Of a stretch of 64,000 bases of DNA, positions 2,037 to 62,268 are shown in pieces. A program made the translations under genes and the position numbers. Origin of the DNA: Octopus sinensis (lineage: Eukaryota); assembly GCF_006345805.1 (NCBI RefSeq), contig NC_043019.1:26039360-26103359 (forward strand), read 5' to 3'. The notes beneath the pieces were generated by a model that did no database searches, was not told where the DNA came from, and was given only the letters and a program-made list of their open reading frames with translations. The number at the start of each line of letters is the position of its first letter. Position 1 is the stretch's first letter.

Positions 2037-3940
2037 AATGTAATGTTAATTTATGTTCCAAACTCAAGTTTAGTAATGACTAAGTTATTTTACTACATTT
2101 TTTCGTTATTTTAAAATTTAATTGAAAGAAAAGAATGAGTTTCAACAGAAATATAACAAAGGGGTTATGTTCTCTCCAAACTCTCACAGAATGCCAATGT
2201 TATAATGGATGAAAGAGACTTTGGTGGATGGGAGTGGTCCACCAAGAGCAATAATGGCTGTCTCACTACCTTGTGCTTGCTTAATCAACATATTTTAGGG
2301 GGGGGGGAAGTAATGACTGTTTCTTAAGAGATTACAATGTCATATGAAATGCAGTGAATTTTGAATAACGTAAATGGAAAAAAGAAAAACAACAAAAAGA
2401 GACAAATCATGAAGATGTAACTGTTGTGGATTGCATAGAAAGAATTATGTGAAAAGACTAATGAGTGACCTATATATATAAGCAACAAGCATGTGACAGA
2501 GAGGCAAAGCATAATGGCCTCTTTTCTTAGCTACCTCATAAATGCTTGGCAGAACTATGAGGGAGAAATTACAACCGTGTTTCGTGGTCTGCTACCACAA
2601 CAGCTCCTTTATAGGATCCAGTTAGCTCAAGACATCATCAGGAGAAACCACATCCGGTTTCGGCCCCTACTCCTCTACCGTTTTGACGTGGCAGGGCCCC
2701 CCCACCCTTTCAGAGGTGTCTTCAGCTCTGGGGCTGGGTGCATGTCTTCTTTCTTCTTCGTTCTTCTGTTCCCTGGCCTCTTCGATGTATCGTCAGCGAG
2801 TGTCAGCGGGTGACTGACTGTCTTGTCAAATGTTTTTCCCTTTAAATACCTGCCGCTAGGCTCTTGCGATGTTTATTACGACTCTTTACATTCTGGGTTC
2901 AAATACAGTTGCAGTCAACTTTGCCTTTCGTCCCACCTGCGTCAATGAAATAAAGTCCCAGTCAAACACTGGGGTCAATGTAATTGACTACCCCCACCTA
3001 TCCCTGTCCTAAAATCACTGGCCTTAGGCAACAAACTGGCAGAGTCATTAGCACATTGGACAAAATGCTTATTGTCATTTCATCCGGCTTTACATTCTGA
3101 CTTCAAATTCCGCAATGGTTGACTTTGCCTGTTGGGGATTCATCATCATCGTCATCGTCGTTTAACGTCTGCTTTCCATGCTAGCATGGGTTGGACGGTT
3201 CAACTGGGGTCTGGCTACGGATATGTTTGGATGGTTCTCTTATGTGCCTCAGGCACTGGTATCACAGCTACAAATTCCATTGATGTTGATCGATTGCGAT
3301 TTTGATTTTCCCTTGCCTCAACAGGTCTTCACAAGTGGAGTTTTGTGTCTCAAGAAGGAAAGGAATATGAAAATAAATAAGTACCAGTTGGACACTGGGG
3401 TAAACGTAATTGACTGCCCCCCCCCCCCACACACACACACCCTCTCCCAAAATTTTAAGCCTTGTGCCTTTATTGGAAAGGATTCAGCACGTTGGCAGAA
3501 CCATTAGGAAGCCGGGCAAAATGCTTCCAGGCATTTCATCCATCCTTACATTCTGAGTTCAAATTCTGCTGAGGTCGACTTCGTCTCTCATCCTATCGGG
3601 ATCAATAAATTAAATACCGATCAAACACTAGGGCCGATGTAATTGATTAGTCCTCTCCCCCAAAATTATTACTGCACATTAACCCCTTAAAAATTAATAG
3701 GAATGTTACGATCAGTTTAAAAAATTTTTTTTTTTTTAAACCCAAGAAAACTCGTGATTGGCCTCATTGGAAATCTTTAAATGATTTTCCCAAATTCCTG
3801 ATATAAATTTTCTAAGAAATTAAATTCACAAAAAAAGCAGCTGACGAAAATTAACAAGTGAGAAACAGTGAACAGTGTAGTGTTTGTGAGATATGAGCAG
3901 GTATTAATAGCAGTGTTAGGAGAGGTGGAAAGTTAGTCAC

Positions 3941-4598: not shown

Positions 4599-4696
4599 AC
4601 CCACTCTACTGATAGATATACGAGTGCATCTTTTCCCTGACTTATGGTCTCATAGATGACTCATATATATATATATATGACCTGAACGCAATATAT

Positions 4697-5480
4697 AAAT
4701 GAGCAGATGAGAATAATATGCAGTTTCAATGCCACAAAATTCCAAGCACTTCACTATCAGCCCACAAACAAACTACAACTGAAGTACACGGGACCAGCAG
4801 GCAATGTAATCCCAGGGTTAGGGCCGGTGTATGACCTGGGAATCCACATGAGCAATGATGCAACTTTTCATGTGCGCATTGCTCAGATGGCAACCCTGTG
4901 CAGGTGGGTGGCAGGTTGGATCCTTAGATCCTTCAGGACCAGGAACAGAGACACAATGCTTCTGCTTTGGAAAACCTTTGTCCTCAGTCGTGTGGACTAC
5001 TGCTCCCAACTGGGGTCCCCACAGAGCGTAAAGCTAATTGCAGAACTAGAGGCGATCCAACACCACTATACAAGGAAGATAGACTCAGTAAAACACATGG
5101 GCTACTACAAGAAGTTGAAGGAGCTTCGATTCTATTCCCTGGAGAGGAGACGTGAGAGATATACATTGCTATACATATGGAAAATAACAGAGAGTCTAGC
5201 TCCACATTTCAGAATTGAAATCTACAACAATCCCCAAACTGCACAGTACCAAAGGTTCCATCTTCTCCATCAGGGATATGAACCCAATATTGTAATAGCT
5301 TGGGACTCAAGGGACCACAACTTTTTAATGCTCTACCAGAGGACAATTTTTTATCTGCAATACGATGAACCCACATTGATGCAGGAGGCACAAAGAAGAG
5401 CGACAACATCCAACTTGCTACTTCACCAGAAACAATACTGCAGTAAAGGTGGAGAACCAGCATGGCCTCAGCCACTGGCT
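4697..5480 (+). mobile_element. 5'-truncated CR1/L2-group LINE fragment (RT C-terminal region), frameshifted
   Basis: ORF 4707..5483: FNATKFQALHY, DLGIHMSND, LLWKTFVLSRVDYCSQ, LEAIQ, YSLERRRERY. Upstream frame reads (W)ADENNMQF. Confidence 0.9.
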
Positions 5481-5558
5481 TAAACCCAACCGCGTGTGTA
5501 TCATTGGCGATTTTTTTTTTCCTCCGTCTTCCCTTCCTTGGATCTTTCCTTTTTCTAT

Positions 5559-5593: not shown

Positions 5594-6497
5594 GCTCCTT
5601 CTTTCTTTCCTTTCTTGAGCTATACTATACTTGTTCCACATCCTCGCGTGGTTGTGTTTTCTCTTTGTGTTTTCATGTTTGGACTAACTATATATATATA
5701 TGTATTTATATAAATATGTATATACACACTATATAAATACATACACAGACAAGCATAAATATATATACACACACATATATATATATACATACACTTAAAT
5801 ATATGTATACACATACATATATATGCATACATACATACATACATACATACATACATACTACATACATACATACATACATACATACATACATACATACATA
5901 CATACATACATACATACATTGCTCAAATATTTGATCACTATAAACAAATCATCTGTGCCAATTGTTTAGTAAGAAATTACATGGCCCTCATTTGTTCTCT
6001 ATATATTAGTGAAGTAAAAATTATGTAGCAACATCAAATGGTGGTGCTGCAGCATGGTCACAGCTTGTGAGCTGAAACTAGTTTCCATTCGATTTAATCC
6101 ATATATACACATGCATACACACACAATGTGCATCTTCCATACAAGTGTCCACCTCCAAGTCACCAGCTAACAATATTTTCTTACATGTCCCACTTACAGC
6201 TACCCACACCACCCAATAGCCACACCCAGTCTCCAATTAATGATTCTTGTTCCCACCAAGCTAAAAGGACTATGTAGTGATTTGACAGGCTAGAAATAGC
6301 ACACTACTGCCTTAAACAAGAAAGGAACACATTATATTGTGTAGCCATAAATATACATAAACAGACAGGATGGTCGTGGTTGGAATACTTTTGATCACTG
6401 TCTGCTCAACAAGGATTGAACTGGGGCTAAACATAAGACTACCTCCCTTCTACAACTACCAAGCCAAAACTTTTATTTGAAACAAGTAATTCCTTAC

Positions 6498-7670
6498 CTT
6501 TTTTAATTCCTCGATTTCTTTCTCCAGAGATTTGATTTTGGCAGTGAACTGGGCCTTAATTTTTAACATTCTAGAATCAGAGATCTTTGTAGGAGATGCA
6601 TCGGAAGATTTATGCTTTTCCCGAGGCTTGATGTTCTGTACCTCTGCTTCCTCTGGTTTCAAAAGCCCTTCCTGTTTCTGGTGCTGGTAGTAGTGCAACT
6701 GAGTTTTAACATCTTCCAGTTCTGTTCTTTGGTGCCGGAATTGTTCCTCGAGTTGTTTTCTCTGAGCCATTTCTACTTCTAGCCGTCGTGAGAGTTCTGT
6801 CAGCTTCTCTGGTGAACCAACTGCAGGCGTTAAACCACTTGCACTTGCATGGACAGCATCTTTTAAAGAAACGGAATTCTTCAAGTCATTTACTTCAGTG
6901 CAAACCTGTTGATAGCGTTCTTGGAGTGCATTGTAATGAAGTGCAGCCTGAGAGTAAGCAGATTCGTACTGCTTCAACGATGCTTGGAGAGTGTGAAGCT
7001 GTAGATTCATCTCTCCTTTTTCTTCTTCATTTTTTTCAACAAGCGCTTTCAAGCGACTTTCCATTTTTTGTTTCTCGGATTTCCATTGTGTCTCATAATC
7101 TGAAAAAGTCTGTTGCATGAGGAGGTTTTGCTCAGTACTAACAGCAAGTTTTTCTTTTAAATTCTTCACACTGTCCATAACGCTGTGCAGTTGCTGGTCT
7201 TTATTGGCCAAGTCGTTTGTCTGGATCTCAATCACCTGAATTTTCCCCTGGAGGACCTCATTGATATCTTTTATTTTCTGTTCCATCATTTTCAACATTT
7301 GATCCTGTATATTTCCTCCTCCCTCTCTCGACATGATGTTTTCTATATCACGTTCATGTCTGGCCAGCAGTTCACGGAGGTCGTTGTCACGTGTAGCCAA
7401 GTCCTTCTCTCTGTCGAGAATGAGGCATCTCAGTTGTGAAATCTCTCCTTCACGGTCATTAAGGGTTTCCTCAAAGTACCTCTGGGTTTCTGATAGCCGA
7501 AGACTGAACCGCTCAGATTCAACTTTTAGGTTATGCTCAGCCTTCTCCAGATTCTCTATCAACAGGGACATTTTCTCTTCTTCAGATTCAACTTTATTAG
7601 TCAACTTTGAAATCAGAGCAGTCTGAGATGTTATGTTCTGGTCTTTTTCAACAATGGATGTCTGTAAAAC
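6498..7670 (-). CDS. GOLGB1: Giantin-like golgin large exon (391 aa coiled coil, VLQTSIVEKDQ...KIKSLEKEIEELKK)
   Basis: Acceptor tttctacag|GTT, donor AAG|gtaagg; 1173 nt, phase 0-0; contains ORF 6456..7604; E/K/Q/L-rich. Confidence 0.9.
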
Positions 7671-11336: not shown

Positions 11337-11925
11337 TTAAAAAGAATCTTCCTTTGTCCCCTTTGTAACAACTTACTGATCTTCGTTCTACCCCATTCTT
11401 ATTCAAGCTGCTATGCTTTCCAACCACCCAAGTCATCTAGGTAACAGAAACTGTCAAAGTTTTTCTAGAAAACCTTTAAAAGAAGTCCTTTCAGGAATGC
11501 TTTTACTGCTAACTACTCCTGATGTATCTGCTACTAATAAAAATTTTCTCTCTCAGCTAACCTGTGACCTCACTACGCCCTCTCTTTATATTTGGTACAC
11601 AGTATAGAATTTTCCCCCACACCTTTTCTATGAATCAATCATAACCACCTCGCAATAAAGTTCTCCATTCTTTCTTGCTAATTAAGACTTTTACCTGTGA
11701 ATGGTTTACTTTTGGGTCCTTTTGATATGAGATTCCACTATCATTTTTGAAAGTTTTCCTCAAATTCTTTGATTTCATTAGAAAAGCTCAGTCATCGATT
11801 TATTAGAATTCCTACAGACATCCAGTCTGGAAATGTTCCACTATAGCCCAGAGAATTATAATAAACAAGATATGCCAGAGAACCAAACCAAAACTCTAAG
11901 AGAAATGTTATGTAAGAATTGTTAC

Positions 11926-12210
11926 CTGAGATTTAGCAGAAGGGTTCTCAGACTCATTAATATCCCTGATTATTTTATCACGATCAACAAGCTGACTGTT
12001 CAATGTATTTATTATTTCTTTAAGCTGATTGATTGTTTGATCCCTGTCCACCAAGGTTTTATCTTTAGCCAACATCTCCTCATCATGATTCACCAACTGT
12101 TCCTCTTTCTCGGCCAAGATACGGTCCTTCTCAACGAGTTTACGACGTAACAATTTGATTTTACCCCGACTGACTTGCTCTGCCGGATTTTCATCTCCAC
12201 ACTCACTGCC
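11926..12210 (-). CDS. GOLGB1: Giantin-like golgin exon (95 aa, GSECGDENPAEQ...LRRKLVEKDRILAEKEEQL...SAKSQ)
   Basis: Acceptor aacag|GGC, donor CAG|gtaac; 285 nt, phase 0-0; in frame with ORF 11908..12153; acidic/basic coiled coil. Confidence 0.8.
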
Positions 12211-13882
12211 CTGTTAGAATCAAAAACATAAATACTGTTCAAATACTAGAGCTGATAAAATACCAGTTGACTACTGGGGTTCATGAGTAAGTCCCGTCAA
12301 CAACTGGGGTTGATTATTAGAAACCTTATGCTTATATTTTGAAGGCTTGTAACCTAGTAGATAGGGTGTTACACTCATGATTCTAAGATTATGGTTTCAA
12401 TTCCCAGACTGGACGGTATGGTGTGTTCTTCAATAAAACACTTCATTTCTATTGCCCCAGTGCACTCAGCTGCAAATAGGTTCCAACATAAGCTGAGAAG
12501 TAAACTGGGAAGTGTTTCTGACTGATTTTTATAATAAAAGATAACGAGTTAGGAATTACCTCCTGGCATAACAGCACAAAAATCCTTTTGGTTTAATATT
12601 TTGTCTGCTTTCCACAGACTTTATATAAAACCAATGTTGATAACATCATCATCATCATCATCAACCACTGGACATCACTGTCTCAACTCCCAAGGCATAT
12701 CCCAGTATCCACAGCATATTAGTGACCAAGATCACAACATTCACCTTGAATGGGATGCCAGTCCATTGCAGGGGCAACTTCTGGGGCTGATAATTTGAGA
12801 TGATTTTATACTTATTTTAGAAATCAATAAGATTAATTTAGTTTCTCAACAATTAACGTAGCATTATTTAAAGATTGCAAAGAGGCAGAAACGTTAGCAC
12901 GCCAGACAAGATGCATAGCAGCATTTCATGTGTCTTTACGTTATGAATTCAAGTTCCGCTGAGGTCGACTTTGCCCTTCATATTTTCAGATTCAATAAAA
13001 TAACACTGGGGTCAATGTAACAGACAGTTACCCAGCCCCAAAAATTTCAGGCCTTGTGCCTATAGTAGAAATAATTAATGTAGTATTTAAGGGCTGCAAA
13101 CTGGCAGAATCATTAGCACGCTGGACAATATGCTTGGTGGAACTTCTTCCAGTTTTACAATCTGAGTTCAAATTCCACTGAGGTTGACTTTGTCTTTTAT
13201 CCTTTTAGGGTCAATAAAATAAGTACCAGTTATATATTGGGGAAAATGTAATCAACTACCTCGCTTACCCCAATATTTCAAGCCTTGTGCCTATGGTAGA
13301 AAGAATTAATGTAATGATTTCGAGATGAGGTTAACAGAATGAAAATATAGGAACATTTTGAAAGCAGAACTCTATCAAGGGCCACCCAAACAGCTTTGCT
13401 ATATTTCATATGAGGCTAAATATAACTACATACCTGATCATTTAAATATTTAAAATATTTTATCAGATTGACCAAAGCCTTGTGAGTGAATTTGGTAGAT
13501 GGAAACTGAAAGAAGTCTGTTCTATCATCATCATCATCATCATCATTGAATGTCCGTCTTCCATGCATGCATGGGTAGGAGGTCTGACAGGAGCTGGCCA
13601 GGTAGAAAAACTACCCCAGGCTACTGTGTCTGTTTTGGCAGGGTTTTCATGGCTGGATGCTCTTCCTAACACCAGCCACCCTGCAGAGTAGACTCGGTGC
13701 CTTTTACATGGCACATGTACAGGCAAGGTTAGTTTTGACATGGTTTTGACAGCTGGATGCCCTTCCAAATGCCAACCACTTTAAAATGTGGACTGGGTAC
13801 TTTTTATGTGGCAGCAGCATTGGCAGGGTCACCAAGTAACTTGCAAGACAAGGAATATAAACACACATATATATATCTATAT

Positions 13883-15080: not shown

Positions 15081-15636
15081 TACAAGGGTGAGTCAAAAAG
15101 TAATGCCATTTTGTTTAGGACTGGTATAATTACCAGCAGAGGAACATGTATTATACATCAAAATGAAGCTGGTCCTCTGTGGATCACATCCCTACTTCTC
15201 ACTGTTTCTCTCAATAGCAATGTTCCACCTTCGAATGAGAGCATGTATCCCTGCCCCATAAAATTCTGTTGACTGTTCTTTGAGCCACTTCTTCACTACG
15301 GTTTTCACTTCCTCATCACTGGAATAATGTTTGTCTCTCAAACCCTCTTTCATGGGGCCGAAGAGATGACAGTCCAGTGACGATGATAGTCCAGTGACGA
15401 GGAAGTGAAAACTAGTGAAGTGGCTCAAAGAACAGTCAACAGTATTTTAAGGGACAGGGATACATGCTCTCATCTGAAGGTGGAACATTGCTATTGAGAG
15501 AAACAATGATTATGTTAAGAAGTAGGGATGTGATCTACAGAGGACCAGCTTCATTTTGATGTATGATACATGTCCCTGTGTTGGTAATTATACCTGTCCT
15601 AAACAAAATGGCGTTACTTTTTGACTCACTCTCATA
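15081..15636. mobile_element. Palindromic mariner-derived MITE made of two inverted transposase 3' ends
   Basis: TA-caagggtgagtcaaaaagtaa..ttactttttgactcactctca-TA. Minus ORF 15192..15428 reads HLFGPMKEGLR..SDEEVKT..WLKEQSTEFY.AGIHALIRRWNIAIERN; the same C-terminus is present on + in the right arm. Confidence 0.9.
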
Positions 15637-16267: not shown

Positions 16268-16421
16268 AACACAGAAATAAGCAGAGAGAGAAAATGAAAA
16301 AAAGGTTTAGTGGCTAGCGATCCACTCATGGTGACAGAGGTGGTCAGACAGGAGAGCTAGGAAGATATAGTTTGAAAAGAAGAAAGGCAGTGTCTATAAC
16401 ATACAAATAGAAGCCATTTAC

Positions 16422-16544
16422 CTGTAATTCTGATTGTGTCTTTTCGATGATGTTGTCCTTCTCAACTATCATCAGCCTCAGCTGTTTAACAAGTTTCTCA
16501 TTCTCTTCACACTGCATCTGAAGGTCATTGCTGGAACCTGCCAT
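16422..16544 (-). CDS. GOLGB1: Giantin-like golgin, first identifiable coding exon (41 aa, MAGSSNDLQMQCEENEKLVKQLRLMIVEKDNIIEKTQSELQ)
   Basis: Acceptor tttcaag directly followed by ATG at 16544; donor CAG|gtaaat; 123 nt, phase 0; heptad coiled coil. Resembles the N-terminal LVVELKDIIRQKD segment of vertebrate giantin (from recall). Confidence 0.7.
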
Positions 16545-17004
16545 CTTGAAACAGAAGAAGGAATCAGAGTTCAGAGAGTTTGTCTCATAACAACGATAGT
16601 TGACAACAACAACAACAACGAAGATGATGACGACAACACCATCCTTATCAGCATTTCTACCAAGATTTCCACCATCACTATAAACATTATTATTTCTTTC
16701 TAGAAGGATTTATCCGGGAGGAAAATACAATCCCTGTGAACTTTGAAGACAACCACATTTTCCAGCATAAATGTTGACATAGTACAGAGTGTAAAGCAAG
16801 AAATTAAACATTCAAACATTGGCACTATCTTTCCAAATCTGCAGCATTTCATATGGAATTTTTGGCTCTTCCAAAGTTGTCTTGGTGCATAAGTTGACCT
16901 ATCTTTTTTTTTTTTTTTTTGGTTGTAAAATTTGGCCTTGAAAGTATCCTAGACTAATCACTTTGGTGTAACTGATATTGAGTTTGGACAGCTGCAAACA
17001 CTAC

Positions 17005-19040: not shown

Positions 19041-19126
19041 AAGAAGATCCACTATGGTCTTATATGCTTTGCCCTGTTTATAATTATACCACATTTATAT
19101 ATATATATATACACCACACACATATA

Positions 19127-19182
<56 letters not shown>

Positions 19183-19183
<1 letters not shown>

Positions 19184-19566
19184 GAGTGGCTGAGTGGTAA
19201 GTAGCTTGCAACCAACCACATGGTCCGGGTTCAGTCCCACTGCGTGGTATCTTGGGCAAGTGTCTTCTGCTATAGCCCCGGGCCGACCAATGCCTTGTGA
19301 GTGGATTTGGTAGACAGAAACTGAAAGAAGTCTGTCGTATATATATATATATGTATGTGTGTGTGAGTGTCTTGTTTGTCCCCCTAGCATTGCTTGACAA
19401 CCGATGCTGATGTGTTTATGTCCCCGCACTTAGCGGTTCGCCAAAAAGAGACCGATAGAATAAGTACTGGGCTTACAAAGAATAAGTCCCGGTCGATTTG
19501 CTTGACTAAAAGTGGTGCTCCAGCATGGCCGCATCAAATGACTGAAACAAGTAAAAGAGTAAAAGA
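19183..19566 (+). mobile_element. SINE family A
   Basis: Near-complete match to 26734-27121. Confidence 0.9.
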
Positions 19567-19707
19567 AAAAAGAGTATATATACACACACACACATATGAT
19601 GGACAGTCTCTTCTAACTACCAAATTCACACCAGGGTATCAAACATATTCTTCCTTCTAGTCCAAGAGGACTTCCTCTTCCAACTAACAGATAAATATGA
19701 ATAAGAC

Positions 19708-19812
19708 CTTTTACTGTAACTACTATAGGCCTAGGCTGATTAATTGCTTGCAACTACCAAATTCACTTGCAAGCAATTAATCAGCCTAGGGCTATAGTAG
19801 TTACAGTAAAAG
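19708..19812. repeat. Near-perfect inverted repeat: 46-bp arms (45/46), 13-nt loop
   Basis: cttttactgt..ttgcaa | ctaccaaattcac | ttgcaa..acagtaaaag. Confidence 0.97.
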
Positions 19813-20256
19813 ACACTTGGCCCAGATGCAGCACAATATGCAATGTTTCCTTCCTGTTTTAAGACAACAGTGATAGGGTGGGAGTTTATTTGAGAGAGAT
19901 TTAGCTACTATCTTTAGCAAGTTGGCTCATACTTACAGCAGTTGGTTATGTGAGATGCAGTACTGACAGTGTAGGCAAGTCACCTCTGCTCCACTATCAT
20001 ACCGTTTGTGTTTGCACAATGCACGTGACTGAGTTGTAAGGGTACCTAAGAAGACAGTGCTGTAGTGGACATTCTCTGTAATGATTACTTCTGTCTAGAG
20101 TTCAGCCAGTCATATTGCTCGGCTATTGTAAGCTATGATGGGTTTGGTGGCTGTGTAAACCCTGTTGTAAAGACATGGCATCCGGTTTTTCATGTTAGCA
20201 TGGGTGGGAGGGGAACCGTTTTACCTATCACTTATTGCTTGTGTGTGTGTGATATA

Positions 20257-25004: not shown

Positions 25005-26733
25005 AACTAAACTTGAGTTACAGTTTATCACTTGATTTTCATGGAATCCATTCGTATTATATTTTCATTTTTGTTTCTTCAAAATTGGTCTGCAACTAGA
25101 ATCTTCAAAGTAAGAATATTTTCAAATTATTCAAAAAATAAAAAATCCTTATATAATACTTCCAAATGTTGTTAACAGACCAGAATGTCACATCAGGCAT
25201 TTCTGTATTTTCTTTGAGTGCAGAAAGACTCAAGAACTGATAAAAGTCTTCATGTCCCAAATTTCATATTTGAACATAAAAAAGCTTTGAAACAAATTTA
25301 CAAAGAGGTGCTGAAGAATTCTTGGCTTTAAAGGTATTGCGAAAGGCCTGGTTGGAGGCCCAACCTTCTGAGTATTTTTTGCAGGGCTTTTAAAAACTGA
25401 AGGACTGCTGCAATAAGCAGGGAGGACCATAATTAACTGATCCTCCTATATTTTCTTTTGCCCAAAGCCAGAAACTTTCAGCACACCTTAATCAAATTCA
25501 CAATTATTTTCGAAGCGGAAAACTCATTAAACCTGAAATATAAATCTAACATATAAAATTAGTCACTTTTAAACTTCTTCCTGTTGTCTCACAAGAAAAA
25601 ATCTTGGTTTCAAAGAATTATGACATTTCCACAAAAATAAACTATAAAAGTGAATCTGTTTAGCATCATTCACCAACCGGCAAACTTCAGAGCAGAACAG
25701 CAAGCAATGAAATGTTTTTGTTGTTCAGTTCATACAACTGACTAAACCAAGCAATCAGTCATTTAGAGTAGTGATCCCCAATATTTTTTTGTTCACCACA
25801 GAGTGGTTTCATGCAAAACTATTTTTCCACAGCACAGACCAAAGGGCCACACGCATAATAAAGCACAATAAAGTGCATAATATATAATTTAATTATTACA
25901 TATATAATAGTAGCTTGCTAACGAACCACATGGTTCCAGGTTCAGTCCCACTGTGTGGCACCTTGGGCAAGTGTCTTCTACTATAGCCTCAGGCCGACCA
26001 AAGCCTTGTGAGTGGATTTGGTAGATGGAAACTGAAAGAAGCTCGTCATGTATATATATATATATATATACATACATACACACACACATATATACATATG
26101 TATATATGGTATGTGTGTAGATGTTTGTCCCCCCAACAACGCATAATAACTGATGCCAGTGTGTTTACATCCCCGTAACTTAGCGGTTCAGCAAAAGGGA
26201 CCAATAAAATAAGTACTAAGCTTACAGAAAATAAGTCCTATGGTCGATTTGCACAACTAAAGGCAGTGCCCCAGCATGGCTGTAGTCAAATGACTGAAAC
26301 AAATAAAAGAATAAAAGAATAAAAAAGAATAACATTTGGAATATAAATTGACAGAATTTTGGTGGCAGAAGGTTTTTAATTTTGGTCACTTTAAAATGGA
26401 ATTTGTTTCAAAGAACTAGGCGTGGCCACAGGTGGGTTGGTTTCAGAAGGGTTCTTTTGCATTTATGACCAAATGCCTGGCAGATAAGTCTTGAACTATT
26501 TTCTCTTCTGTTATAAGCCAAACCTGAGCTAATGGTAAAGTTTAATCCCTGTGTAGATGACAGGAAGGTCAGAGTCCTGAGTATAACAAAACAAAAAGAA
26601 ATAAGGATGCCACCATGAAAAACAGCTGCTTGTTTTTGAATGAAAATAATTTATTGAGAACGGTCTTGTCGAATGAATTTGAACCATCAATGTTTTAGAT
26701 TGAATATCCCTATATGTAATAATTAAATTATAC

Positions 26734-27121
26734 AGGAGTGGCTGTGTGGTAAGTAGCTTGCTAACCAACCACATGGTTCCGGGTTCAGTCCCACTGTGTG
26801 GCATCTTGGGCAAGTGTCTTCTACTATAGCCCCGGGCCGACCAATGCCTTGTGAGTGGATTTGGTAGACGGAAACTGAAAGAAGCCTGTCGTATATGTGT
26901 GTATGTGTTTGTGTGTGTGTGTTTGTCCCCCTAGCATTGCTTGACAACCGATGCTGGTGTGTTTACGTCCCCGTCACTTAGCAGTTCGGCAAAAGAGACC
27001 GATAGAATAAGTAAGTACTGGGCTTACAAAGAATAAGTCCCGGGGTTGATTTGCTCGACTAAAGGCGGTGCTCCAGCATGGCCGCAGTCAAATGACTGAA
27101 ACAAGTAAAAGAGTAAAGAGT
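26734..27121 (+). mobile_element. tRNA-derived SINE family A, full length
   Basis: A/B-box-like head (ggagtggctgtgtggtaag..ggttcagtcccac), internal microsatellite, tail ending aagtaaaagag. Further + copies at about 8694, 19183, 25905, 39950, 50606 and 57881. Confidence 0.9.
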
Positions 27122-32506: not shown

Positions 32507-33520
32507 TTATATATACACATGCACAAATGTCTATACAGATGTATATAAAAAAAGTGTATATTCAAAAGGTAATTTTTTATATATATCTGCACAGACTTTC
32601 TCACTGGTGATGCCTTTCCCAATAAATATATACATATATATATATGACAGGCTTCTTTCAGTTTCCGTCTACCAAATCCACTCACAAAGCTTTGGTTAGC
32701 CTGAGGCTACAGTAGAAGACACTTGCCGAAAGTCCCACGCAGTGGGACCGAATCCGGAACCATGTGGTTGGTAAGCAAGCTACTTACCTCACAGCCACTC
32801 CTGTGCCTTATATATAATATATATATATATATTATATATATATATATGTATGTATGTATGTATTAAGTATGTATGCATGTATTTGATATAGCAATATATG
32901 TATACATCATCATCATCATTTAACATTCACCTTCCATGCTGGCATGGGTGGGACAGTTACACAAGAGTCGGCCAGGCAGAAGCCTGCAGCAGACTTCTGT
33001 GACTGTTTTGGCAGGATTTTTACAGCTAGATGCCCTTCCTAACACCAACTATGCAGCAGAGTGGACTTGGTGCTTTTTACGTGGCACGAGCACAGGGGAG
33101 GTCAGTTTTGGCAAGGTTTTTACAGCTGGATGCCCCTCTGAACACCAGCCACTTTACAGTGTGGACTGCCTGCTTTTTAGTGACATCTGCACTGACAGGG
33201 TCACCAAGTACATGCAAGACAAAAAAAATACATATAAAAAATACATATAGAAATATACATATATACATGTGTGTGTGTGTGTAAGCCATTTCGGATAGAA
33301 AAAGTCAAAGGCTCAAAAGTTACCTGTAGGACATGAATCTACATCTCTTGTATGTATCTCTTGCCTTCAACACTTTCTATCCAAAGGATTTTTAACCTGG
33401 TGTTTACATGCTATTATTCACACCATTATGTGCTTCAAGATCCACTGTTTCAAAATATAATCATAAATATATATATATATATAGGTTCAGCAAAAATTTA
33501 GATTCGAAGAAAACCTCTAT

Positions 33521-52216: not shown

Positions 52217-52690
52217 TCATCATCATCATCATTTAACGTCCGCTTTCCATGCTAGCATGGGTTGGACAGTTCAACTGGGGTCTGGGGAGCCCGAAGGCTG
52301 CACCAGGCCAGTCAGATCTGGCAGTGTTTCTACAGCTGGATGCCCTTCCTAACGCCAACCACTCCGAGAGTGTAGTGGGTGATTTTATGTGCCACCGACA
52401 CAGGTGCCAGACGAGGCTGGCAGACGGCCACGCTCAGATGGTGTTTTTATGTGCCACCGACACAGGTGCCAGATGAGGCTGGCGAACGGCCACGATCGGA
52501 TGGTGTTTGTTACGTGCCCACAGCACGGAGGCCAGTCGATGCGGTACTGGCTACGGCCACGTTCGGATGGTTATCTTGTGTGCCACCGGCACTGGTACCA
52601 CAAGGATACAAATTCCATTGATGTTCATCTATTTTGACTTGTTTTGATTTGATTTTGATTTGATTTGATTTTGATTTTCACTTGCCTCGT
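52214..52690 (-). mobile_element. Family C element, young
   Basis: Close match to 1461-2036 with fewer internal units; CpGs retained. Confidence 0.85.
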
Positions 52691-52693
52691 ATG

Positions 52694-52754
<61 letters not shown>

Positions 52755-52962
52755 GTATGTATATATATATATATATATTTTATAAAGGGCTTAGTAAAAT
52801 AAATACTTTGCCACATACTGAACTCATTAGAAATAGCAGCCAAAAAAATTTTTTTAGCCATTTCTAATACTTAAAGAAAATTTCTCTCAGATAGTATTTA
52901 CTCAAAATAACCCACGAAGGTATGGGGGTAAAAACATTAAAAAATCACAAGTGCAAAGATTA

Positions 52963-53024
52963 TTTGAGAACGTACGTTTCTAGATCAGCCAAATACAATT
53001 CGACATTTCTTTCGTCAGCTCAAA
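52963..53024 (-). ncRNA. Minimal type I hammerhead ribozyme motif, satellite copy 1
   Basis: Minus strand: UUUGAG-CUGACGA-AAGA(..)UCUA-GAAAC-GUAC-GU-U-CUCAAA. 6-bp stem I, intact core, palindromic stem III loop, GUU triplet; predicted cut at 52969/52968. Confidence 0.8.
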
Positions 53025-53525
53025 ATTTCTTAATTCGGATTTGTAAACACTGAAAGTAGGAGCATACCCTTTTGGCGACTTTTCACCTCCGAAGATCCGT
53101 TCAGACTAACAGTGCCAACAAATTCAAAATATGCAAGCGAAGAATTTCTGCCCTCCCTTTCCACCCACGTGGGCTAAACTAGTAAACACCATGTTTTATC
53201 GGTGAAAACCGAAGCATTAAACAGAGAGAAATGAATTATAATTAAAACAATTGAGGGTAAAATTAATTAATCATTAATCAATTTCACCAAGTATTCAGTA
53301 TGTAAAGGGACCATTTAAGGCGAATTCAAAATATTACATTTTATAAAGGGCTTAGTAAAATAAATTACTTTGCCACATACTGAACTCATTAGAAATAGCA
53401 GCCAAAAAAAATTTTTTTAGCCATTTCTAATACTTAAAGAAAATTTCTCTCAGATAGTATTTACTCAAAATAACCCACGAAGGTATGGGGGTAAAAACAT
53501 TAAAAAATCACAAGTGCAAAGATTA

Positions 53526-53587
53526 TTTGAGAACGTACGTTTCTAGATCAGCCAAATACAATTCGACATTTCTTTCGTCAGCTCAAA
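53526..53587 (-). ncRNA. Minimal type I hammerhead ribozyme motif, satellite copy 2
   Basis: Identical to copy 1. Confidence 0.8.
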
Positions 53588-54087
53588 ATTTCTTAATTCG
53601 GATTTGTAAACACTGAAAGTAAGAGCATACCCTTTTGGCGACTTTTCACCTCCGAAGATCCGTTCAGACTAACAGTGCCAACAAATTCAAAATATGCAAG
53701 CGAAGAATTTCTGCCCTCCCTTTCCACCCACGTGGGCTAAACTAGTAAACACCATGTTTTATCGGTGAAAACCGAAGCATTAAACAGAGAGAAATGAATT
53801 ATAATTTCAACAATTGAGGGTAAAATTAATTAATCATTAATCAATTTCACCAAGTATTCAGTATGTAAAGGGACCATTTAAGGCGAATTCAAAATATTAC
53901 ATTTTATAAAGGGCTTAGTAAAATAAATTACTTTGCCACATACTGAACTCATTAGAAATAGCAGCCAAAAAAATTTTTTTAGCCATTTCTAATACTTAAA
54001 GAAAATTTCTCTCAGATAGTATTTACTCAAAATAACCCACGAAGGTATGGGGGTAAAAACATTAAAAAATCACAAGTGCAAAGATTA

Positions 54088-54149
54088 TTTGAGAACGTAC
54101 GTTTCTAGATCAGCCAAATACAATTCGACATTTCTTTCGTCAGCTCAAA
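54088..54149 (-). ncRNA. Minimal type I hammerhead ribozyme motif, satellite copy 3
   Basis: Identical to copy 1. Confidence 0.8.
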
Positions 54150-54649
54150 ATTTCTTAATTCGGATTTGTAAACACTGAAAGTAAGAGCATACCCTTTTGG
54201 CGACTTTTCACCTCCGAAGATCCGTTCAGACTAACAGTGCCAACAAATTCAAAATATGCAAGCGAAGAATTTCTGCCCTCCCTTTCCACCCACGTGGGCT
54301 AAACTAGTAAACACCATGTTTTATCGGTGAAAACCGAAGCATTAAACAGAGAGAAATGAATTATAATTTCAACAATTGAGGGTAAAATTAATTAATCATT
54401 AATCAATTTCACCAAGTATTCAGTATGTAAAGGGACCATTTAAGGCGAATTCAAAATATTACATTTTATAAAGGGCTTAGTAAAATAAATTACTTTGCCA
54501 CATACTGAACTCATTAGAAATAGCAGCCAAAAAAATTTTTTTAGCCATTTCTAATACTTAAAGAAAATTTCTCTCAGATAGTATTTACTCAAAATAACCC
54601 ACGAAGGTATGGGGGTAAAAACATTAAAAAATCACAAGTGCAAAGATTA

Positions 54650-54711
54650 TTTGAGAACGTACGTTTCTAGATCAGCCAAATACAATTCGACATTTCTTTC
54701 GTCAGCTCAAA
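54650..54711 (-). ncRNA. Minimal type I hammerhead ribozyme motif, satellite copy 4
   Basis: Identical to copy 1. Confidence 0.8.
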
Positions 54712-54943
54712 ATTTCTTAATTCGGATTTGTAAACACTGAAAGTAGGAGCATACCCTTTTGGCGACTTTTCACCTCCGAAGATCCGTTCAGACTAACAGT
54801 GCCAACAAATTCAAAATATGCAAGCGAAGAATTTCTGCCCTCCCTTTCCACCCACGTGGGCTAAACTAGTAAACACCATGTTTTATCGGTGAAAACGAAG
54901 CATTAAACAGAGAGAAATGAATTATAATTTCAACATATATATA

Positions 54944-54986
<43 letters not shown>

Positions 54987-55530
54987 ATTCTTTTATTCTT
55001 TCACTTCTTTCAGTCATTTGACTGCAGCCATGCTGGAGCACTGCCTTTAATTGAGCAAATCGACCCCGGGACTTATTCTTTGTAAGCCTAGTACTTATTC
55101 TATCGGTCTCTTTTGCTGAACCACTAAGTTGTGAGAACATAAACACACCGACACCAGTTGTCGAGCAGTGGTGGGGGACAAGAATAGACACAAAGACACA
55201 CACACATAGATATATGCATATATATATGATTCTAATCGCAATGGCTGAAGACTAGCATCACACTTGAAACTTAAAGTACCAAGAATTTTAATCAAACTGT
55301 TGATGCATACACACACACATACATACATACACACACATACACATACATATATACATACACATACACACACACGCAACAGGCTTGTTTCAGCTTCTGTCTA
55401 CCAAATACACTCACAAGGCCTTGGTCAGCCCAAGGCTATAGTTAAAGACACTTGCCTAAGGTGCCGCACAGTGGGATTGAACCCAGAACCATGTGGTTGG
55501 TAAGCAAGCTTTTTACCACACAGCCACACC
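54987..55530 (-). mobile_element. SINE family A (reverse), expanded internal microsatellite
   Basis: Reverse complement of tail (54987-55200) and head (55375-55530). Confidence 0.85.
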
Positions 55531-60971: not shown

Positions 60972-61384
60972 TTTTTTACTCTTTTACTTGTTTCAGTCAT
61001 TTGACTGCAGCCATGCTGGATCACCGCCTTTAGTCAAGCAACTCGTCCCCAGGACTTATTCTTCGTAAGCCCAGTACTTATTCTATCAGTCTCTTTTGCC
61101 GAACCGCTAAGTGACGGAGACGTAAACACACCAGCATCGGTTGTCAAGCAATGCTAGGGGGACAAACACAGACACACAAACATATATATATATATATAAT
61201 ATATATATATACATATATACGACGGGCTTCTTTCAGTTTCCATCTACCAAATCCACTCACAAGGCTTTGGTCAGCCCGAGGCTATTGTAGAAGACACTTG
61301 CCCAAGGTGCCACGCAGTGGGACTGAACCCGGAACCAAGTGGTTGGTAAGCAAGCTACTTACCACACAGCCACTCCTGCGCCTA
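60972..61384 (-). mobile_element. SINE family A (reverse), followed by a forward tail-only copy (61385-61590)
   Basis: Full reverse-complement match; same arrangement at 62706-63300. Confidence 0.9.
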
Positions 61385-61746
61385 TATGTGTGTGTGTATC
61401 TGTCCCACCACCATCGCTTGACAACCAATGCTGGTGCGTTTATGTCCCCATCACTTACCAGTTCAGCAAAAGAATCCGATAGAATAAGTACTAGGCTTAC
61501 AAATAATAAGTCCTGTGGTCGATTTGTTCGACTAATGGTGGTGCTCCAGCATGGCTGCAGTCAAATGACTGAAACAAGTAAAAGAATAATACCCAAAATA
61601 TTTTTATACAATTCCTAATAATACTTAATTACAAAAATTTAAAAGGATTTTTCCTATGAACATCGAATGGCTTAGGGGGTCCAACAGATTAGAAAATGAA
61701 CTAAAAGGGTTTGATAAACAAAAAATAGTTGAGAACTGCTGAGGGA

Positions 61747-62268
61747 GAGACTAGAAAGGGTATGGCCTGGTCAGCCTGTAATGACATGCATAAGATCTGG
61801 TCATCAAATCTAAGTAGAGACTTCAAACTTGAAATATTCAAAGCCACAGTCGAACCAATTCTACTATATGGCTCAGAAACCTGGACGTTATCAAAGAAGC
61901 TTGAGAGGCGGTTGGATGGAACCTACACTCGCCTCCTTATGAGAGCTCAAAATCTCTCGTGGAAGCGCCATCCAACCAAAATGCAAATATATGGGAAACT
62001 ACCACCTGTGTCATCTCCTGTGAAGGTAGGAGAGTCCAGTTTGCTGGACATTGTTGTAGAGCTGAAAAAGAAGTCATTTCTACTCTTCTCCTCTGGAAGC
62101 CATCTACTCGCAATACCAGAGGGCGCACACTCTCCTACCCTGATGTAATCTCCAGGGATACAGGCATCCAGCAACAGGACCTCCGTAATGCTATGATGGA
62201 CCGTGAAGTCTGGCGTAACATAGTAAATTCCATGGTCTCGACCACGGTCGAACAATGATGATGAATGA
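61747..62268 (+). mobile_element. 5'-truncated RTE-clade LINE 3' end
   Basis: KIWSS..FKATVEPILLYGSETWTL..RLDGTYTRLL, then a frameshift to RVQFAGHCCR..DREVWRNIV; (TGA)n tail. Confidence 0.92.

What the first reader, a model, noticed from the sequence alone, without database searches (positions are those of the whole stretch)
52778..54934. 562-bp tandem satellite carrying one minimal hammerhead ribozyme per unit (candidate octopus retrozyme / self-cleaving satellite)
Seen: 3.8 near-identical 562-563 bp units. On the minus strand each reads UUUGAG-CUGACGA-AAGA-[AAU GUCGAAU UGU AUUUGGC UGA]-UCUA-GAAAC-GUAC-GU-U-CUCAAA. That gives a perfect 6-bp stem I, an intact CUGANGA...GAAA core, an extendable stem II, and a 2-bp stem III capped by a palindrome (ACGUACGU), with a GUU cleavage triplet. 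Predicted cuts at 52969/68, 53532/31, 54094/93 and 54656/55 would release monomers of 563, 562 and 562 nt. The unit also has a long hairpin (attagaaatggctaaaaaaa/tttttttggctgctatttctaat). Known: tandem repeats with one type I HHR per monomer are the layout of newt satellite 2, Schistosoma Sm-alpha, cricket pDo500, animal non-LTR retrozymes (which make circular RNAs) and Penelope pseudo-LTRs; palindromic stem III loops allow dimeric cleavage. Inference: a recently amplified, non-coding, self-cleaving RNA replicon mobilised in trans, with a monomer longer than most described retrozymes. Caveat: the pair closing stem II is A-A in all copies and GUU is a weaker triplet.
Basis: partly seen in the sequence, partly recalled or inferred. 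Interest (0 to 1): 0.92.

Follow-up and report, generated by a model that had tools for sequence, protein, structure and literature searches.

The report
Tandem repeat carrying a hammerhead ribozyme motif
A young, non-coding 562-bp tandem repeat inserted in a (TA)n microsatellite carries one hammerhead-ribozyme-like motif per unit on its minus strand, which makes it a probable new example of the already known animal "retrozyme" class and not a new kind of element.

Summary
There are 3.84 head-to-tail units of 562/563 bp at about 52778-54934. The full units differ at only 4 positions.

The motif has the complete hammerhead core, a perfect 6-bp helix I and a 2-bp helix III inside the palindrome ACGUACGU. 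A relaxed descriptor finds it nowhere else in the window and never in 30 Mb of composition-matched random sequence.

Rfam Hammerhead_1 aligns to it end to end, but only at 21.1 bits (curated cut-off 34). It appears only when 101 nt are searched, and helix II is skipped. The 10.1/11.1 position is A·A and the cleavage triplet is GUU.

Independent support: the minus-strand monomer RNA folds far better than shuffles (z about -6.5), and the plus strand does not (z about -2.5). Helix I closes the monomer ends. The array sits exactly inside a (TA)n tract, a target reported for Penelope-like elements. The unit is non-coding and 33% GC.

No other copy, transcript or relative could be retrieved, so cleavage, circles, mobilisation and covariation are untested. 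The host species could not be identified. A 562-bp unit is within the published range (51-972 bp). Verdict: probable non-LTR retrozyme-type array, a new member of a known kind.

The parts
52777..54934 (-). Tandem array of 3.84 units of 562/563 bp. It is 33% GC and non-coding. In RNA sense (minus strand) it starts inside a unit at GUUGAAAUUAUAAUUC (54934) and ends at ...CCCUUUAUAAAAU (about 52778).
54643..54718 (-). Hammerhead-like motif, copy 1. The 62-nt motif is at 54650-54711. Helix I is UUUGAG/CUCAAA plus a 3x3 internal loop plus AAGA/UCUU. The core is CUGACGA...GAAA. Helix II is A-A, 3 bp, a 3x3 loop and 7 bp (two G-U). Helix III is AC/GU with loop GUAC. The predicted cut is after GUU, between 54656 and 54655.
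54081..54156 (-). Hammerhead-like motif, copy 2, identical to copy 1. The 62-nt motif is at 54088-54149. Predicted cut 54094/54093.
53519..53594 (-). Hammerhead-like motif, copy 3, identical to copy 1. The 62-nt motif is at 53526-53587. Predicted cut 53532/53531.
52956..53031 (-). Hammerhead-like motif, copy 4, identical to copy 1. The 62-nt motif is at 52963-53024. Predicted cut 52969/52968.
54513..54555 (-). Long hairpin of the unit: 19 bp with a 3-nt bulge and two G-U pairs. It is repeated at 53951-53993, 53388-53431 and 52826-52868.
54381..54413 (-). A/U-rich 15-bp hairpin of the unit (GGUGAAAUUGAUUAAUGAUUAAUUAAUUUUACC). It is repeated at 53819-53851 and 53256-53288.
52690..52778 (.). Left flanking (TA)n/(TATG)n microsatellite that abuts the array.
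54935..54988 (.). Right flanking (AT)n microsatellite that abuts the array. A dispersed SINE-like repeat follows it.

Best explanation
The array is a non-LTR retrozyme-type element. This is a non-coding, non-autonomous retroelement whose minus-strand transcript carries one type I hammerhead ribozyme per unit.

The proposed cycle is inferred from the published class; none of it is shown here:
1. A multimeric minus-strand RNA is made. The promoter is unknown.
2. Helix III is only 2 bp, so neighbouring hammerheads pair through the palindrome ACGUACGU. This gives a double hammerhead with an 8-bp helix III.
3. The RNA cuts itself after GUU and releases monomers of 562/563 nt.
4. Helix I (6 bp plus a 4-bp extension) holds the two ends together, and a host tRNA ligase closes the circle.
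5. The compact, about 65% paired RNA is copied more than once around by the reverse transcriptase and endonuclease of a Penelope-like element encoded elsewhere.
6. The copy is inserted into a (TA)n tract, which gives a short array with arbitrary phase at its ends.

The sequence itself shows the repeat, the motif, the strand-specific RNA structure, the absence of coding capacity and the (TA)n flanks.
For: 1. All invariant hammerhead positions are present in the right order and spacing: C3 U4 G5 A6 N7 G8 A9, G12 A13 A14, A15.1-U16.1 and H17=U. Helix I is a perfect 6-bp Watson-Crick stem.
2. The descriptor match is absent from the rest of the window and from 30 Mb of composition-matched random sequence.
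3. Rfam Hammerhead_1 aligns over its full length (positions 1-45 of 45) at exactly these coordinates. Helix III matches the family consensus GAAACGcgCGU. E = 0.0033 for the 101-nt search against all 4227 families.
4. The minus-strand monomer RNA has an MFE of -155.3 kcal/mol against -116.4 +/- 6.3 for shuffles (z = -6.2). My own control gave z = -6.8.
5. The plus strand reaches only z = -2.85 and -2.3. The folds contain 28 G-U pairs on the minus strand and 6 on the plus strand.
6. Among 14 non-repetitive background tiles the mean z is -0.9 (sd 2.1). Only one tile reaches -6, and it does so on both strands, as a DNA inverted repeat would. The asymmetry of the unit points to a structure that exists at the RNA level on the hammerhead strand.
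7. Helices I and II are part of the global MFE of both the linear and the circular monomer, and helix I joins the predicted 5' and 3' ends.
8. Two motif copies cofold into a domain-swapped double hammerhead at -33.4 kcal/mol, against 2 x -12.8 for separate copies. The ACGUACGU self-duplex is -9.8 kcal/mol.
9. The class features of PMC7229834 are met: tandem units, one type I hammerhead each, low GC (33%), no LTR and no ORF.
10. The unit length lies inside the published 51-972 bp range, and 75% of reported families have at most 7 units.
11. The array is bounded on both sides by (TA)n. PMC8557442 names (TA)n as a preferred target of EN+ Penelope-like elements.
12. A mismatch at the base of helix II has a precedent in an active ribozyme. 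Axolotl HHR_Amex2 has U-U there and cleaves better as a dimer.
Against: 1. The Rfam score is 21.1 bits, below the curated 34. The hit disappears when 562 nt or more are searched. Scaled to the whole window its E-value would be about 2.
2. The G10.1-C11.1 pair, described as highly conserved even in minimal Penelope-type hammerheads (PMC4209133), is A-A here.
3. The part of helix II next to the core is only 3 bp before a 3x3 internal loop.
4. GUU is, from general hammerhead enzymology, a poorer cleavage triplet than GUC or GUA.
5. All four copies are identical, so there is no covariation and no test of selective conservation. None of the roughly 8 differences between units falls in the motif, but only about 1 would be expected there.
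6. No second locus, related sequence or transcript could be found.
7. No Penelope-like ORF was seen in the window (read by eye only).
8. The raw folding energy of the unit is ordinary for this repeat-rich window: 33 of 107 tiles fold at least as well. Only the shuffle-normalised, strand-asymmetric signal is unusual.
Confidence: 0.7

Rival explanations
1. The array is a relic retrozyme. It descends from a hammerhead-bearing retroelement, but the present copies no longer cleave because of A-A at 10.1/11.1, the GUU triplet and the weak base of helix II. The four units arose by local unequal exchange or replication slippage in a microsatellite-rich region, not by recent retrotransposition.
For: The deviations from the consensus sit at positions that matter for activity. 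The Rfam score is sub-threshold. No second copy exists in 64 kb. The region is dense in microsatellites, which favour slippage and unequal exchange.
Against: Every strictly invariant core base is intact, and helix I is perfect. In a decaying relic the 13 core positions would be as exposed to mutation as the rest. The units are more than 99% identical, so the array is young. The RNA structure signal is still strong and strand-specific. A helix II base mismatch is tolerated in axolotl HHR_Amex2.
Confidence: 0.17
2. This is an ordinary minisatellite or satellite whose unit matches a loose hammerhead pattern by chance. It has no ribozyme ancestry or function.
For: The hammerhead core is short. The curated Rfam threshold is not met, and the hit depends on the filter setting. 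There is no comparative or expression evidence. In a genome of several Gb, a few tens of matches at this score are expected by chance, by scaling the E-value.
Against: Fewer than about 1e-4 matches are expected per unit. There is no match elsewhere in the window even with much looser rules. Chance does not explain the palindromic helix III typical of dimer-acting animal hammerheads, or helix I closing the whole monomer fold. It also leaves unexplained the G-U-rich structure specific to the same strand and the placement inside (TA)n.
Confidence: 0.08
3. The array is a fragment of an autonomous Penelope-like element, namely tandem pseudo-LTRs, and not a separate non-autonomous element.
For: Penelope-like pseudo-LTRs carry minimal type I hammerheads with a large helix II and a palindromic helix III (PMC4209133). 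These elements insert as partial tandems in microsatellites. A 2026 preprint derives animal retrozymes from pseudo-LTRs.
Against: Hammerhead copies are 562 bp apart with no ORF longer than 52 aa between them, whereas an RT-endonuclease ORF of about 3 kb separates pseudo-LTRs. No reverse transcriptase or GIY-YIG frame adjoins the array or was seen in the window (by eye). [quoted passage not shown]
Confidence: 0.05

Closest known systems
Animal non-LTR retrozymes (Cervera and de la Pena 2020, PMC7229834: coral, mussel, axolotl; newt satellite 2 as the historical prototype)
   Same: Head-to-tail tandem units with one type I hammerhead each. Low GC, no ORF, no LTR, primer-binding site or polypurine tract. 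A highly self-paired monomer RNA. A short helix III with a palindromic loop that implies action as a dimer. A short array, as in most reported families (at most 7 units).
   Different: The unit is 562 bp against 170-400 nt in the 2020 survey, although it lies within the 51-972 bp of the 2026 vertebrate survey. Helix II is 31 nt long with an internal loop, where a 4-bp stem with a loop is usual. Position 10.1/11.1 is A-A. The triplet is GUU. No expression or circular RNA data exist. The score is below Rfam's threshold.
Axolotl HHR_Amex2 retrozyme hammerhead (PMC7229834)
   Same: A 2-bp helix III capped by a tetraloop. A non-Watson-Crick pair at the base of helix II (U-U there, A-A here). Poor activity is expected as a monomer and better activity as a dimer.
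   Different: The axolotl unit is 350 bp, is present in tens of thousands of copies and has demonstrated cleavage and circles. Nothing is demonstrated here.
Minimal hammerheads of Penelope-like element pseudo-LTRs (Cervera and de la Pena 2014, PMC4209133)
   Same: [quoted passage not shown]
   Different: [quoted passage not shown] They have a shorter helix I (4-5 bp) and flank an RT/GIY-YIG ORF. None of this holds here.
Schistosoma Sm-alpha SINE-like hammerhead repeats
   Same: A type I hammerhead in an abundant non-coding repeat of an invertebrate.
   Different: From general knowledge, Sm-alpha is a dispersed, tRNA-derived, Pol III-type element. Here no tRNA-like sequence and no B box were found, and the copies are strictly tandem.

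Membership tests
Hammerhead ribozyme (type I) | Conserved core CUGANGA ... GAAA, with A15.1-U16.1 and a non-G nucleotide at position 17 | tested here: met
   CUGACGA, GAAA, A15.1-U16.1 and U17 are present in all four copies.
Hammerhead ribozyme (type I) | Three helices around the core, with helix I open (type I topology) | tested here: met
   Helix I has 6 Watson-Crick bp plus a 4-bp extension. Helix II has 3 + 7 bp. Helix III has 2 bp with loop GUAC. Helices I and II appear in the MFE folds.
Hammerhead ribozyme (type I) | Watson-Crick pair at 10.1/11.1, usually G-C | tested here: not met
   The position is A-A in all copies. PMC4209133 calls G10.1-C11.1 highly conserved. A U-U exception that is still active exists in axolotl.
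Hammerhead ribozyme (type I) | Score at or above the Rfam RF00163 gathering threshold (34 bits) | tested here: not met
   The score is 21.1 bits with E = 0.0033, over the full model length, and only in a 101-nt search. There is no hit at 562 nt, 2.5 kb or 64 kb.
Hammerhead ribozyme (type I) | Compensatory changes in the helices across related copies | not testable with these tools
   The four copies are identical. There is no other copy in the window or in the searchable collections.
Hammerhead ribozyme (type I) | Site-specific self-cleavage | not testable with these tools
   This needs in vitro transcription.
Animal non-LTR retrozyme | Head-to-tail tandem units, each with one type I hammerhead, and no LTR or ORF | tested here: met
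Animal non-LTR retrozyme | Low GC content (below 45-50%) | tested here: met
   The unit is 33% GC.
Animal non-LTR retrozyme | Unit length within the reported range | tested here: met
   The unit is 562/563 bp. This is outside the 170-400 nt of PMC7229834 but inside the 51-972 bp of the 2026 preprint.
Animal non-LTR retrozyme | Highly self-paired monomer RNA of hammerhead polarity | tested here: met
   z = -6.2 and -6.8 on the minus strand against -2.85 and -2.3 on the plus strand. About 65% of bases are paired.
Animal non-LTR retrozyme | Expressed as linear and circular monomer RNA | not testable with these tools
   No transcriptome data could be reached.
Animal non-LTR retrozyme | Multiple genomic loci, and coexistence with Penelope-like elements in the same genome | not testable with these tools
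   Only 64 kb of this genome are available. It holds no second copy, and no Penelope-like ORF was seen (by eye).
Penelope-like element pseudo-LTR | Hammerhead-bearing repeats flank an RT / GIY-YIG ORF | tested here: not met
   The spacing between hammerheads is 562 bp and the longest frame is 52 aa.
SINE-type hammerhead repeat (Sm-alpha-like) | tRNA-derived Pol III promoter (A and B boxes) and dispersed copies | tested here: not met
   No tRNA was found. No B box was found within 2 mismatches, and there is a single A-box-like match of low information. The copies are tandem.

The most novel reading that the evidence does not exclude
This may be an active circular-RNA retroelement of about 562 nt in a lineage where none is described in the searchable literature. 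Its hammerhead would tolerate an A-A pair at 10.1/11.1. It would use internal loops in an elongated helix II (AAU/UGA, four positions from the core) and in helix I (UAA/AAU, six pairs from the core) as the tertiary contact that normally links loops 1 and 2. That would be a variant hammerhead architecture missed by the standard covariance model.
Probability: 0.3. Interest if true: 0.55.

Novelty: new member of a known kind. Interest (0 to 1): 0.4.

Why it matters
If it is active, it adds a family to the catalogue of ribozyme-bearing circular-RNA retroelements of animals. It would also show that curated hammerhead models at default thresholds miss copies with a long, interrupted helix II and a mismatched 10.1/11.1 pair, which matters for genome annotation. 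Finally, it would give a natural test case for how much deviation at the base of helix II a dimer-acting hammerhead tolerates. It does not open a new class. Tandem repeats with one type I hammerhead per unit have been known since newt satellite 2 and were surveyed broadly in 2014, 2020 and 2026.

Tried and rejected
- Tandem Repeats Finder did not report the array because its longest period is 500. The repeat finder did report it.
- Rfam gave no hammerhead hit at the gathering threshold on the window, at E <= 10 on 2.5 kb, or on one 562-nt period. Only the 101-nt search gave the sub-threshold hit.
- I looked for further copies of the unit in the window by sensitive blastn and found none.
- I tried to reach related contigs through spurious gene calls by searching the concatenated ORF translations of the unit against the 5.8-billion protein set. 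There were no hits.
- Pattern scans found nothing: two of metagenome contigs and one of viral contigs.
- Full-text searches found nothing relevant. I searched for the motif strings, for hammerhead plus octopus, and for retrozyme plus cephalopod terms.
- I tried to identify the organism through the coiled-coil exon at 6456-7604. The best relatives are 56% identical, unnamed, and come from ENA/Logan records without organism names.
- I rejected raw folding energy as evidence. 33 of 107 background tiles fold at least as well, so only shuffle-normalised z-scores and strand asymmetry were used.
- The MFE of a full dimer does not form the inter-unit helix III. This is uninformative, because an 8-bp long-range helix competes with local pairings in such predictions.
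- A tRNA or Pol III promoter origin was rejected.
Full report
**Observation**

The repeat finder gives four in-register copies with start-to-start spacing of 563, 562 and 562 bp. Tandem Repeats Finder missed it only because its longest period is 500. The array runs from about 52777/52778 to 54934, which is 2157 bp or 3.84 units.

When the units are phased at the predicted cleavage sites, the three full units (562, 562 and 563 nt) differ at four positions, one of them an extra T in a T-run. The two truncated end units add a few more differences.

A 62-nt string is identical in four copies on the minus strand, at 54711-54650, 54149-54088, 53587-53526 and 53024-52963:

UUUGAG CUGACGA AAGAAAUGUCGAAUUGUAUUUGGCUGAUCUA GAAAC GUAC GU U CUCAAA

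The long hairpin is present in every unit and forms in the predicted fold.

**Is the motif more than chance?**

I wrote a deliberately loose hammerhead descriptor. It requires:
- helix I next to CUGANGA;
- a helix II of at least 3 pairs, with a closing mismatch allowed and 8-60 nt in all;
- GAAA;
- a helix III of at least 2 pairs;
- a non-G nucleotide at position 17.

The descriptor finds only the four array copies in both strands of the window, even when helix I is relaxed to 4 pairs with G-U allowed.

| Helix I rule | Hits in 30 Mb of second-order Markov sequence |
|---|---|
| 6 Watson-Crick pairs | 0 |
| 5 pairs, G-U allowed | 1 |
| 4 pairs, G-U allowed | 4 |

The Markov model was trained on the window. 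The expectation for one 562-bp unit is therefore below about 1e-4.

**Rfam gives a mixed answer**

| Sequence searched | Threshold | Hammerhead hit |
|---|---|---|
| 64 kb (whole window) | gathering score | none |
| 2.5 kb | E <= 10 | none |
| 562 nt (one period) | E <= 10 | none |
| 101 nt | E <= 10 | RF00163, 21.1 bits, E = 0.0033 |

In the 101-nt search the filters are laxest. There RF00163 Hammerhead_1 aligns over its whole length (positions 1-45 of 45) to exactly 54650-54711 on the minus strand. The family cut-off is 34 bits.

The alignment takes helix I, both core boxes and helix III. The family consensus GAAACGcgCGU corresponds to GAAACGUACGU here. The 31-nt helix II is skipped as an insertion.

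So the curated membership threshold is not met. The long interrupted helix II probably explains both the low score and the loss at the filter stage.

**Anatomy of the motif**

- **Helix I** is a perfect 6-bp stem. It continues after a 3x3 internal loop (AAU/UAA) into 4 more pairs (AAGA/UCUU).
- **Helix II** begins with an A-A opposition at 10.1/11.1. Then come 3 pairs (AGA/UCU), a 3x3 internal loop (AAU/UGA) and a 7-bp stem with two G-U pairs and a 3-nt loop.
- **Helix III** is only A-U and C-G around GUAC. The eight bases ACGUACGU are self-complementary.

Two motif copies cofold into a domain-swapped double hammerhead at -33.4 kcal/mol, against 2 x -12.8 for separate copies. The palindrome alone gives -9.8 kcal/mol. 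This is the arrangement described for newt, axolotl and Penelope-type hammerheads, which cleave poorly alone and better as dimers (PMC4209133, PMC7229834).

The internal loops lie six pairs out on helix I and four positions out on helix II. That is where loops 1 and 2 of canonical type I hammerheads make their tertiary contact. This is my inference and is untested.

**Independent evidence from the rest of the unit**

| RNA | MFE (kcal/mol) | Shuffles (mean +/- sd) | z | z, my re-run |
|---|---|---|---|---|
| Minus-strand monomer | -155.3 | -116.4 +/- 6.3 | -6.2 | -6.8 |
| Plus strand | -108.5 | -91.8 +/- 5.9 | -2.85 | -2.3 |

The minus-strand fold has 28 G-U pairs and the plus-strand fold has 6.

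I checked this against the genomic background. Raw energies are not unusual in this microsatellite-rich window, since 33 of 107 tiles fold at least as well. I therefore did not use raw energy as evidence.

Among 14 non-repetitive tiles the shuffle z-scores average -0.9 (sd 2.1). The only tile that reaches -6 does so on both strands, as a DNA inverted repeat does. A strong structure confined to one strand, and to the same strand as the ribozyme motif, is what an element selected as RNA should show.

In both the linear and the circular MFE, helix I pairs the first six bases after the predicted cut with the bases just upstream of the core. It thereby closes the whole monomer, and helix II also forms.

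The unit is 33% GC. Its longest stop-to-stop frame is 52 aa, and these frames have no protein relatives. No tRNA-like sequence or B box is present.

**Context**

The array is embedded exactly in a (TA)n tract. The left flank is 52690-52778 and the right flank is 54935-54988. Dispersed repeats lie beyond both flanks.

EN+ Penelope-like elements have a reported insertion bias for microsatellites, with (TA)n named as a preferred target (PMC8557442). [quoted passage not shown]

In RNA sense, the 3' end of the array falls in an A/U-rich stretch (UUUAUAAAAU) next to the (AU)n flank. That is compatible with priming on the target by microhomology, but this is weak inference. Target-site duplications cannot be read in a microsatellite.

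No Penelope-like ORF was seen in the window.

**What could not be done**

- No other copy of the unit exists in the window.
- None was found in metagenome or viral contig collections.
- The four hammerhead copies are identical, so covariation and selective conservation cannot be assessed. None of the roughly 8 differences between units falls in the motif, but only about one would be expected there.
- No transcript data are reachable.
- The organism could not be identified. The only clear coding exon (6456-7604, minus strand) has unnamed relatives at 56% identity or less.
- The literature I could search contains no report of hammerheads or retrozymes in cephalopods. The 2020 survey does state that such repeats occur 'from molluscs to arthropods'.

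**Interpretation**

The best explanation is a non-LTR retrozyme-type array (about 0.7). It is a young, short, non-coding tandem insertion whose minus-strand RNA carries a dimer-acting type I hammerhead. It presumably cycles through self-cleaved, ligase-closed circular RNA and is copied and inserted by a Penelope-like enzyme supplied in trans. Only the sequence features are shown here. Transcription, cleavage, circularisation and mobilisation are inferred from the published class.

The main rival (about 0.17) is that this is a relic whose ribozyme no longer works, because of the A-A pair, the GUU triplet and the weak start of helix II, and whose four units arose by local duplication. A chance motif (about 0.08) is unlikely given the descriptor statistics and the independent strand-specific structure. 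A fragment of an autonomous Penelope-like element (about 0.05) is excluded as such by the 562-bp spacing without an ORF.

**Novelty and score**

The layout, the palindromic helix III, the low GC, the short array and even a mismatch at the base of helix II all have published precedents.

This is a new member of a known kind. It has a moderately unusual helix II, and it gives a useful warning that default covariance-model searches miss it. Interest is 0.4.

Noticed in passing
window 6456-7604 (-), with likely further exons at 11911-12213 (-) and 16347-16709 (-): There is a long coiled-coil coding exon of 382 aa. Its relatives are unnamed proteins at 39-56% identity (E down to 4e-104), and two of them carry PF28422. 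A frame at 16347-16709 contains a plausible start (MAGSSNDLQ...). The retrozyme-like array lies about 36 kb upstream of this minus-strand gene, so it is probably intergenic.
   Followed up: partly
window 52378-52518 (and 1477-2111, 3166-3504, 32924-33247): A tandem repeat of about 62 bp (2.3 copies at 52378-52518) lies just left of the array. It belongs to a dispersed family, since the same repeat translates as 'VFYVPPTQVPDEAGKRPRSDG' units at 1477-2111. It looks like the internal minisatellite of a SINE-like or other mobile element.
   Followed up: no
window 15085-15632: A large nested inverted repeat has arms 15085-15199/15518-15632 (93% complementary) and 15199-15291/15417-15509 (94%). It gives the most stable fold in the window, about -300 kcal/mol on both strands. 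It may be two inverted copies of a repeat or a foldback element.
   Followed up: partly
window 19671-20232: This 562-nt tile has a folding z-score of about -6 to -7 on both strands. That is the symmetrical signature of a DNA-level inverted repeat. It was used only as a contrast to the strand-asymmetric array.
   Followed up: no
window 4686-5480 (+) and 61729-62255 (+): These frames resemble the C-terminal parts of non-LTR retrotransposon reverse transcriptases (for example '...ILLYGSETWTLSKKLERRL...'). The 4707-5483 frame had no Pfam hit. They are not Penelope-like by eye.
   Followed up: partly
window 54989-55200, 61151-61618, 19055-19657, 26532-26930 and others: Many copies of a dispersed SINE-like repeat are present; their spurious translations share 'LPNPLTR.WSARGY.RRHLPK.PRSGTEPG' and 'LQHGCSQMTE.S.RI'. 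One copy directly follows the right (AT)n flank of the array, so the microsatellite that received the array may be the tail of that element.
   Followed up: no
window 54302-54313 (-), unit position 355: There is an exact match to the loose Pol III A-box pattern TRGCNNANNNGG (TAGCCCACGTGG) on the hammerhead strand. No B box accompanies it. About 0.1 such matches are expected per unit by chance, so it is probably meaningless.
   Followed up: yes
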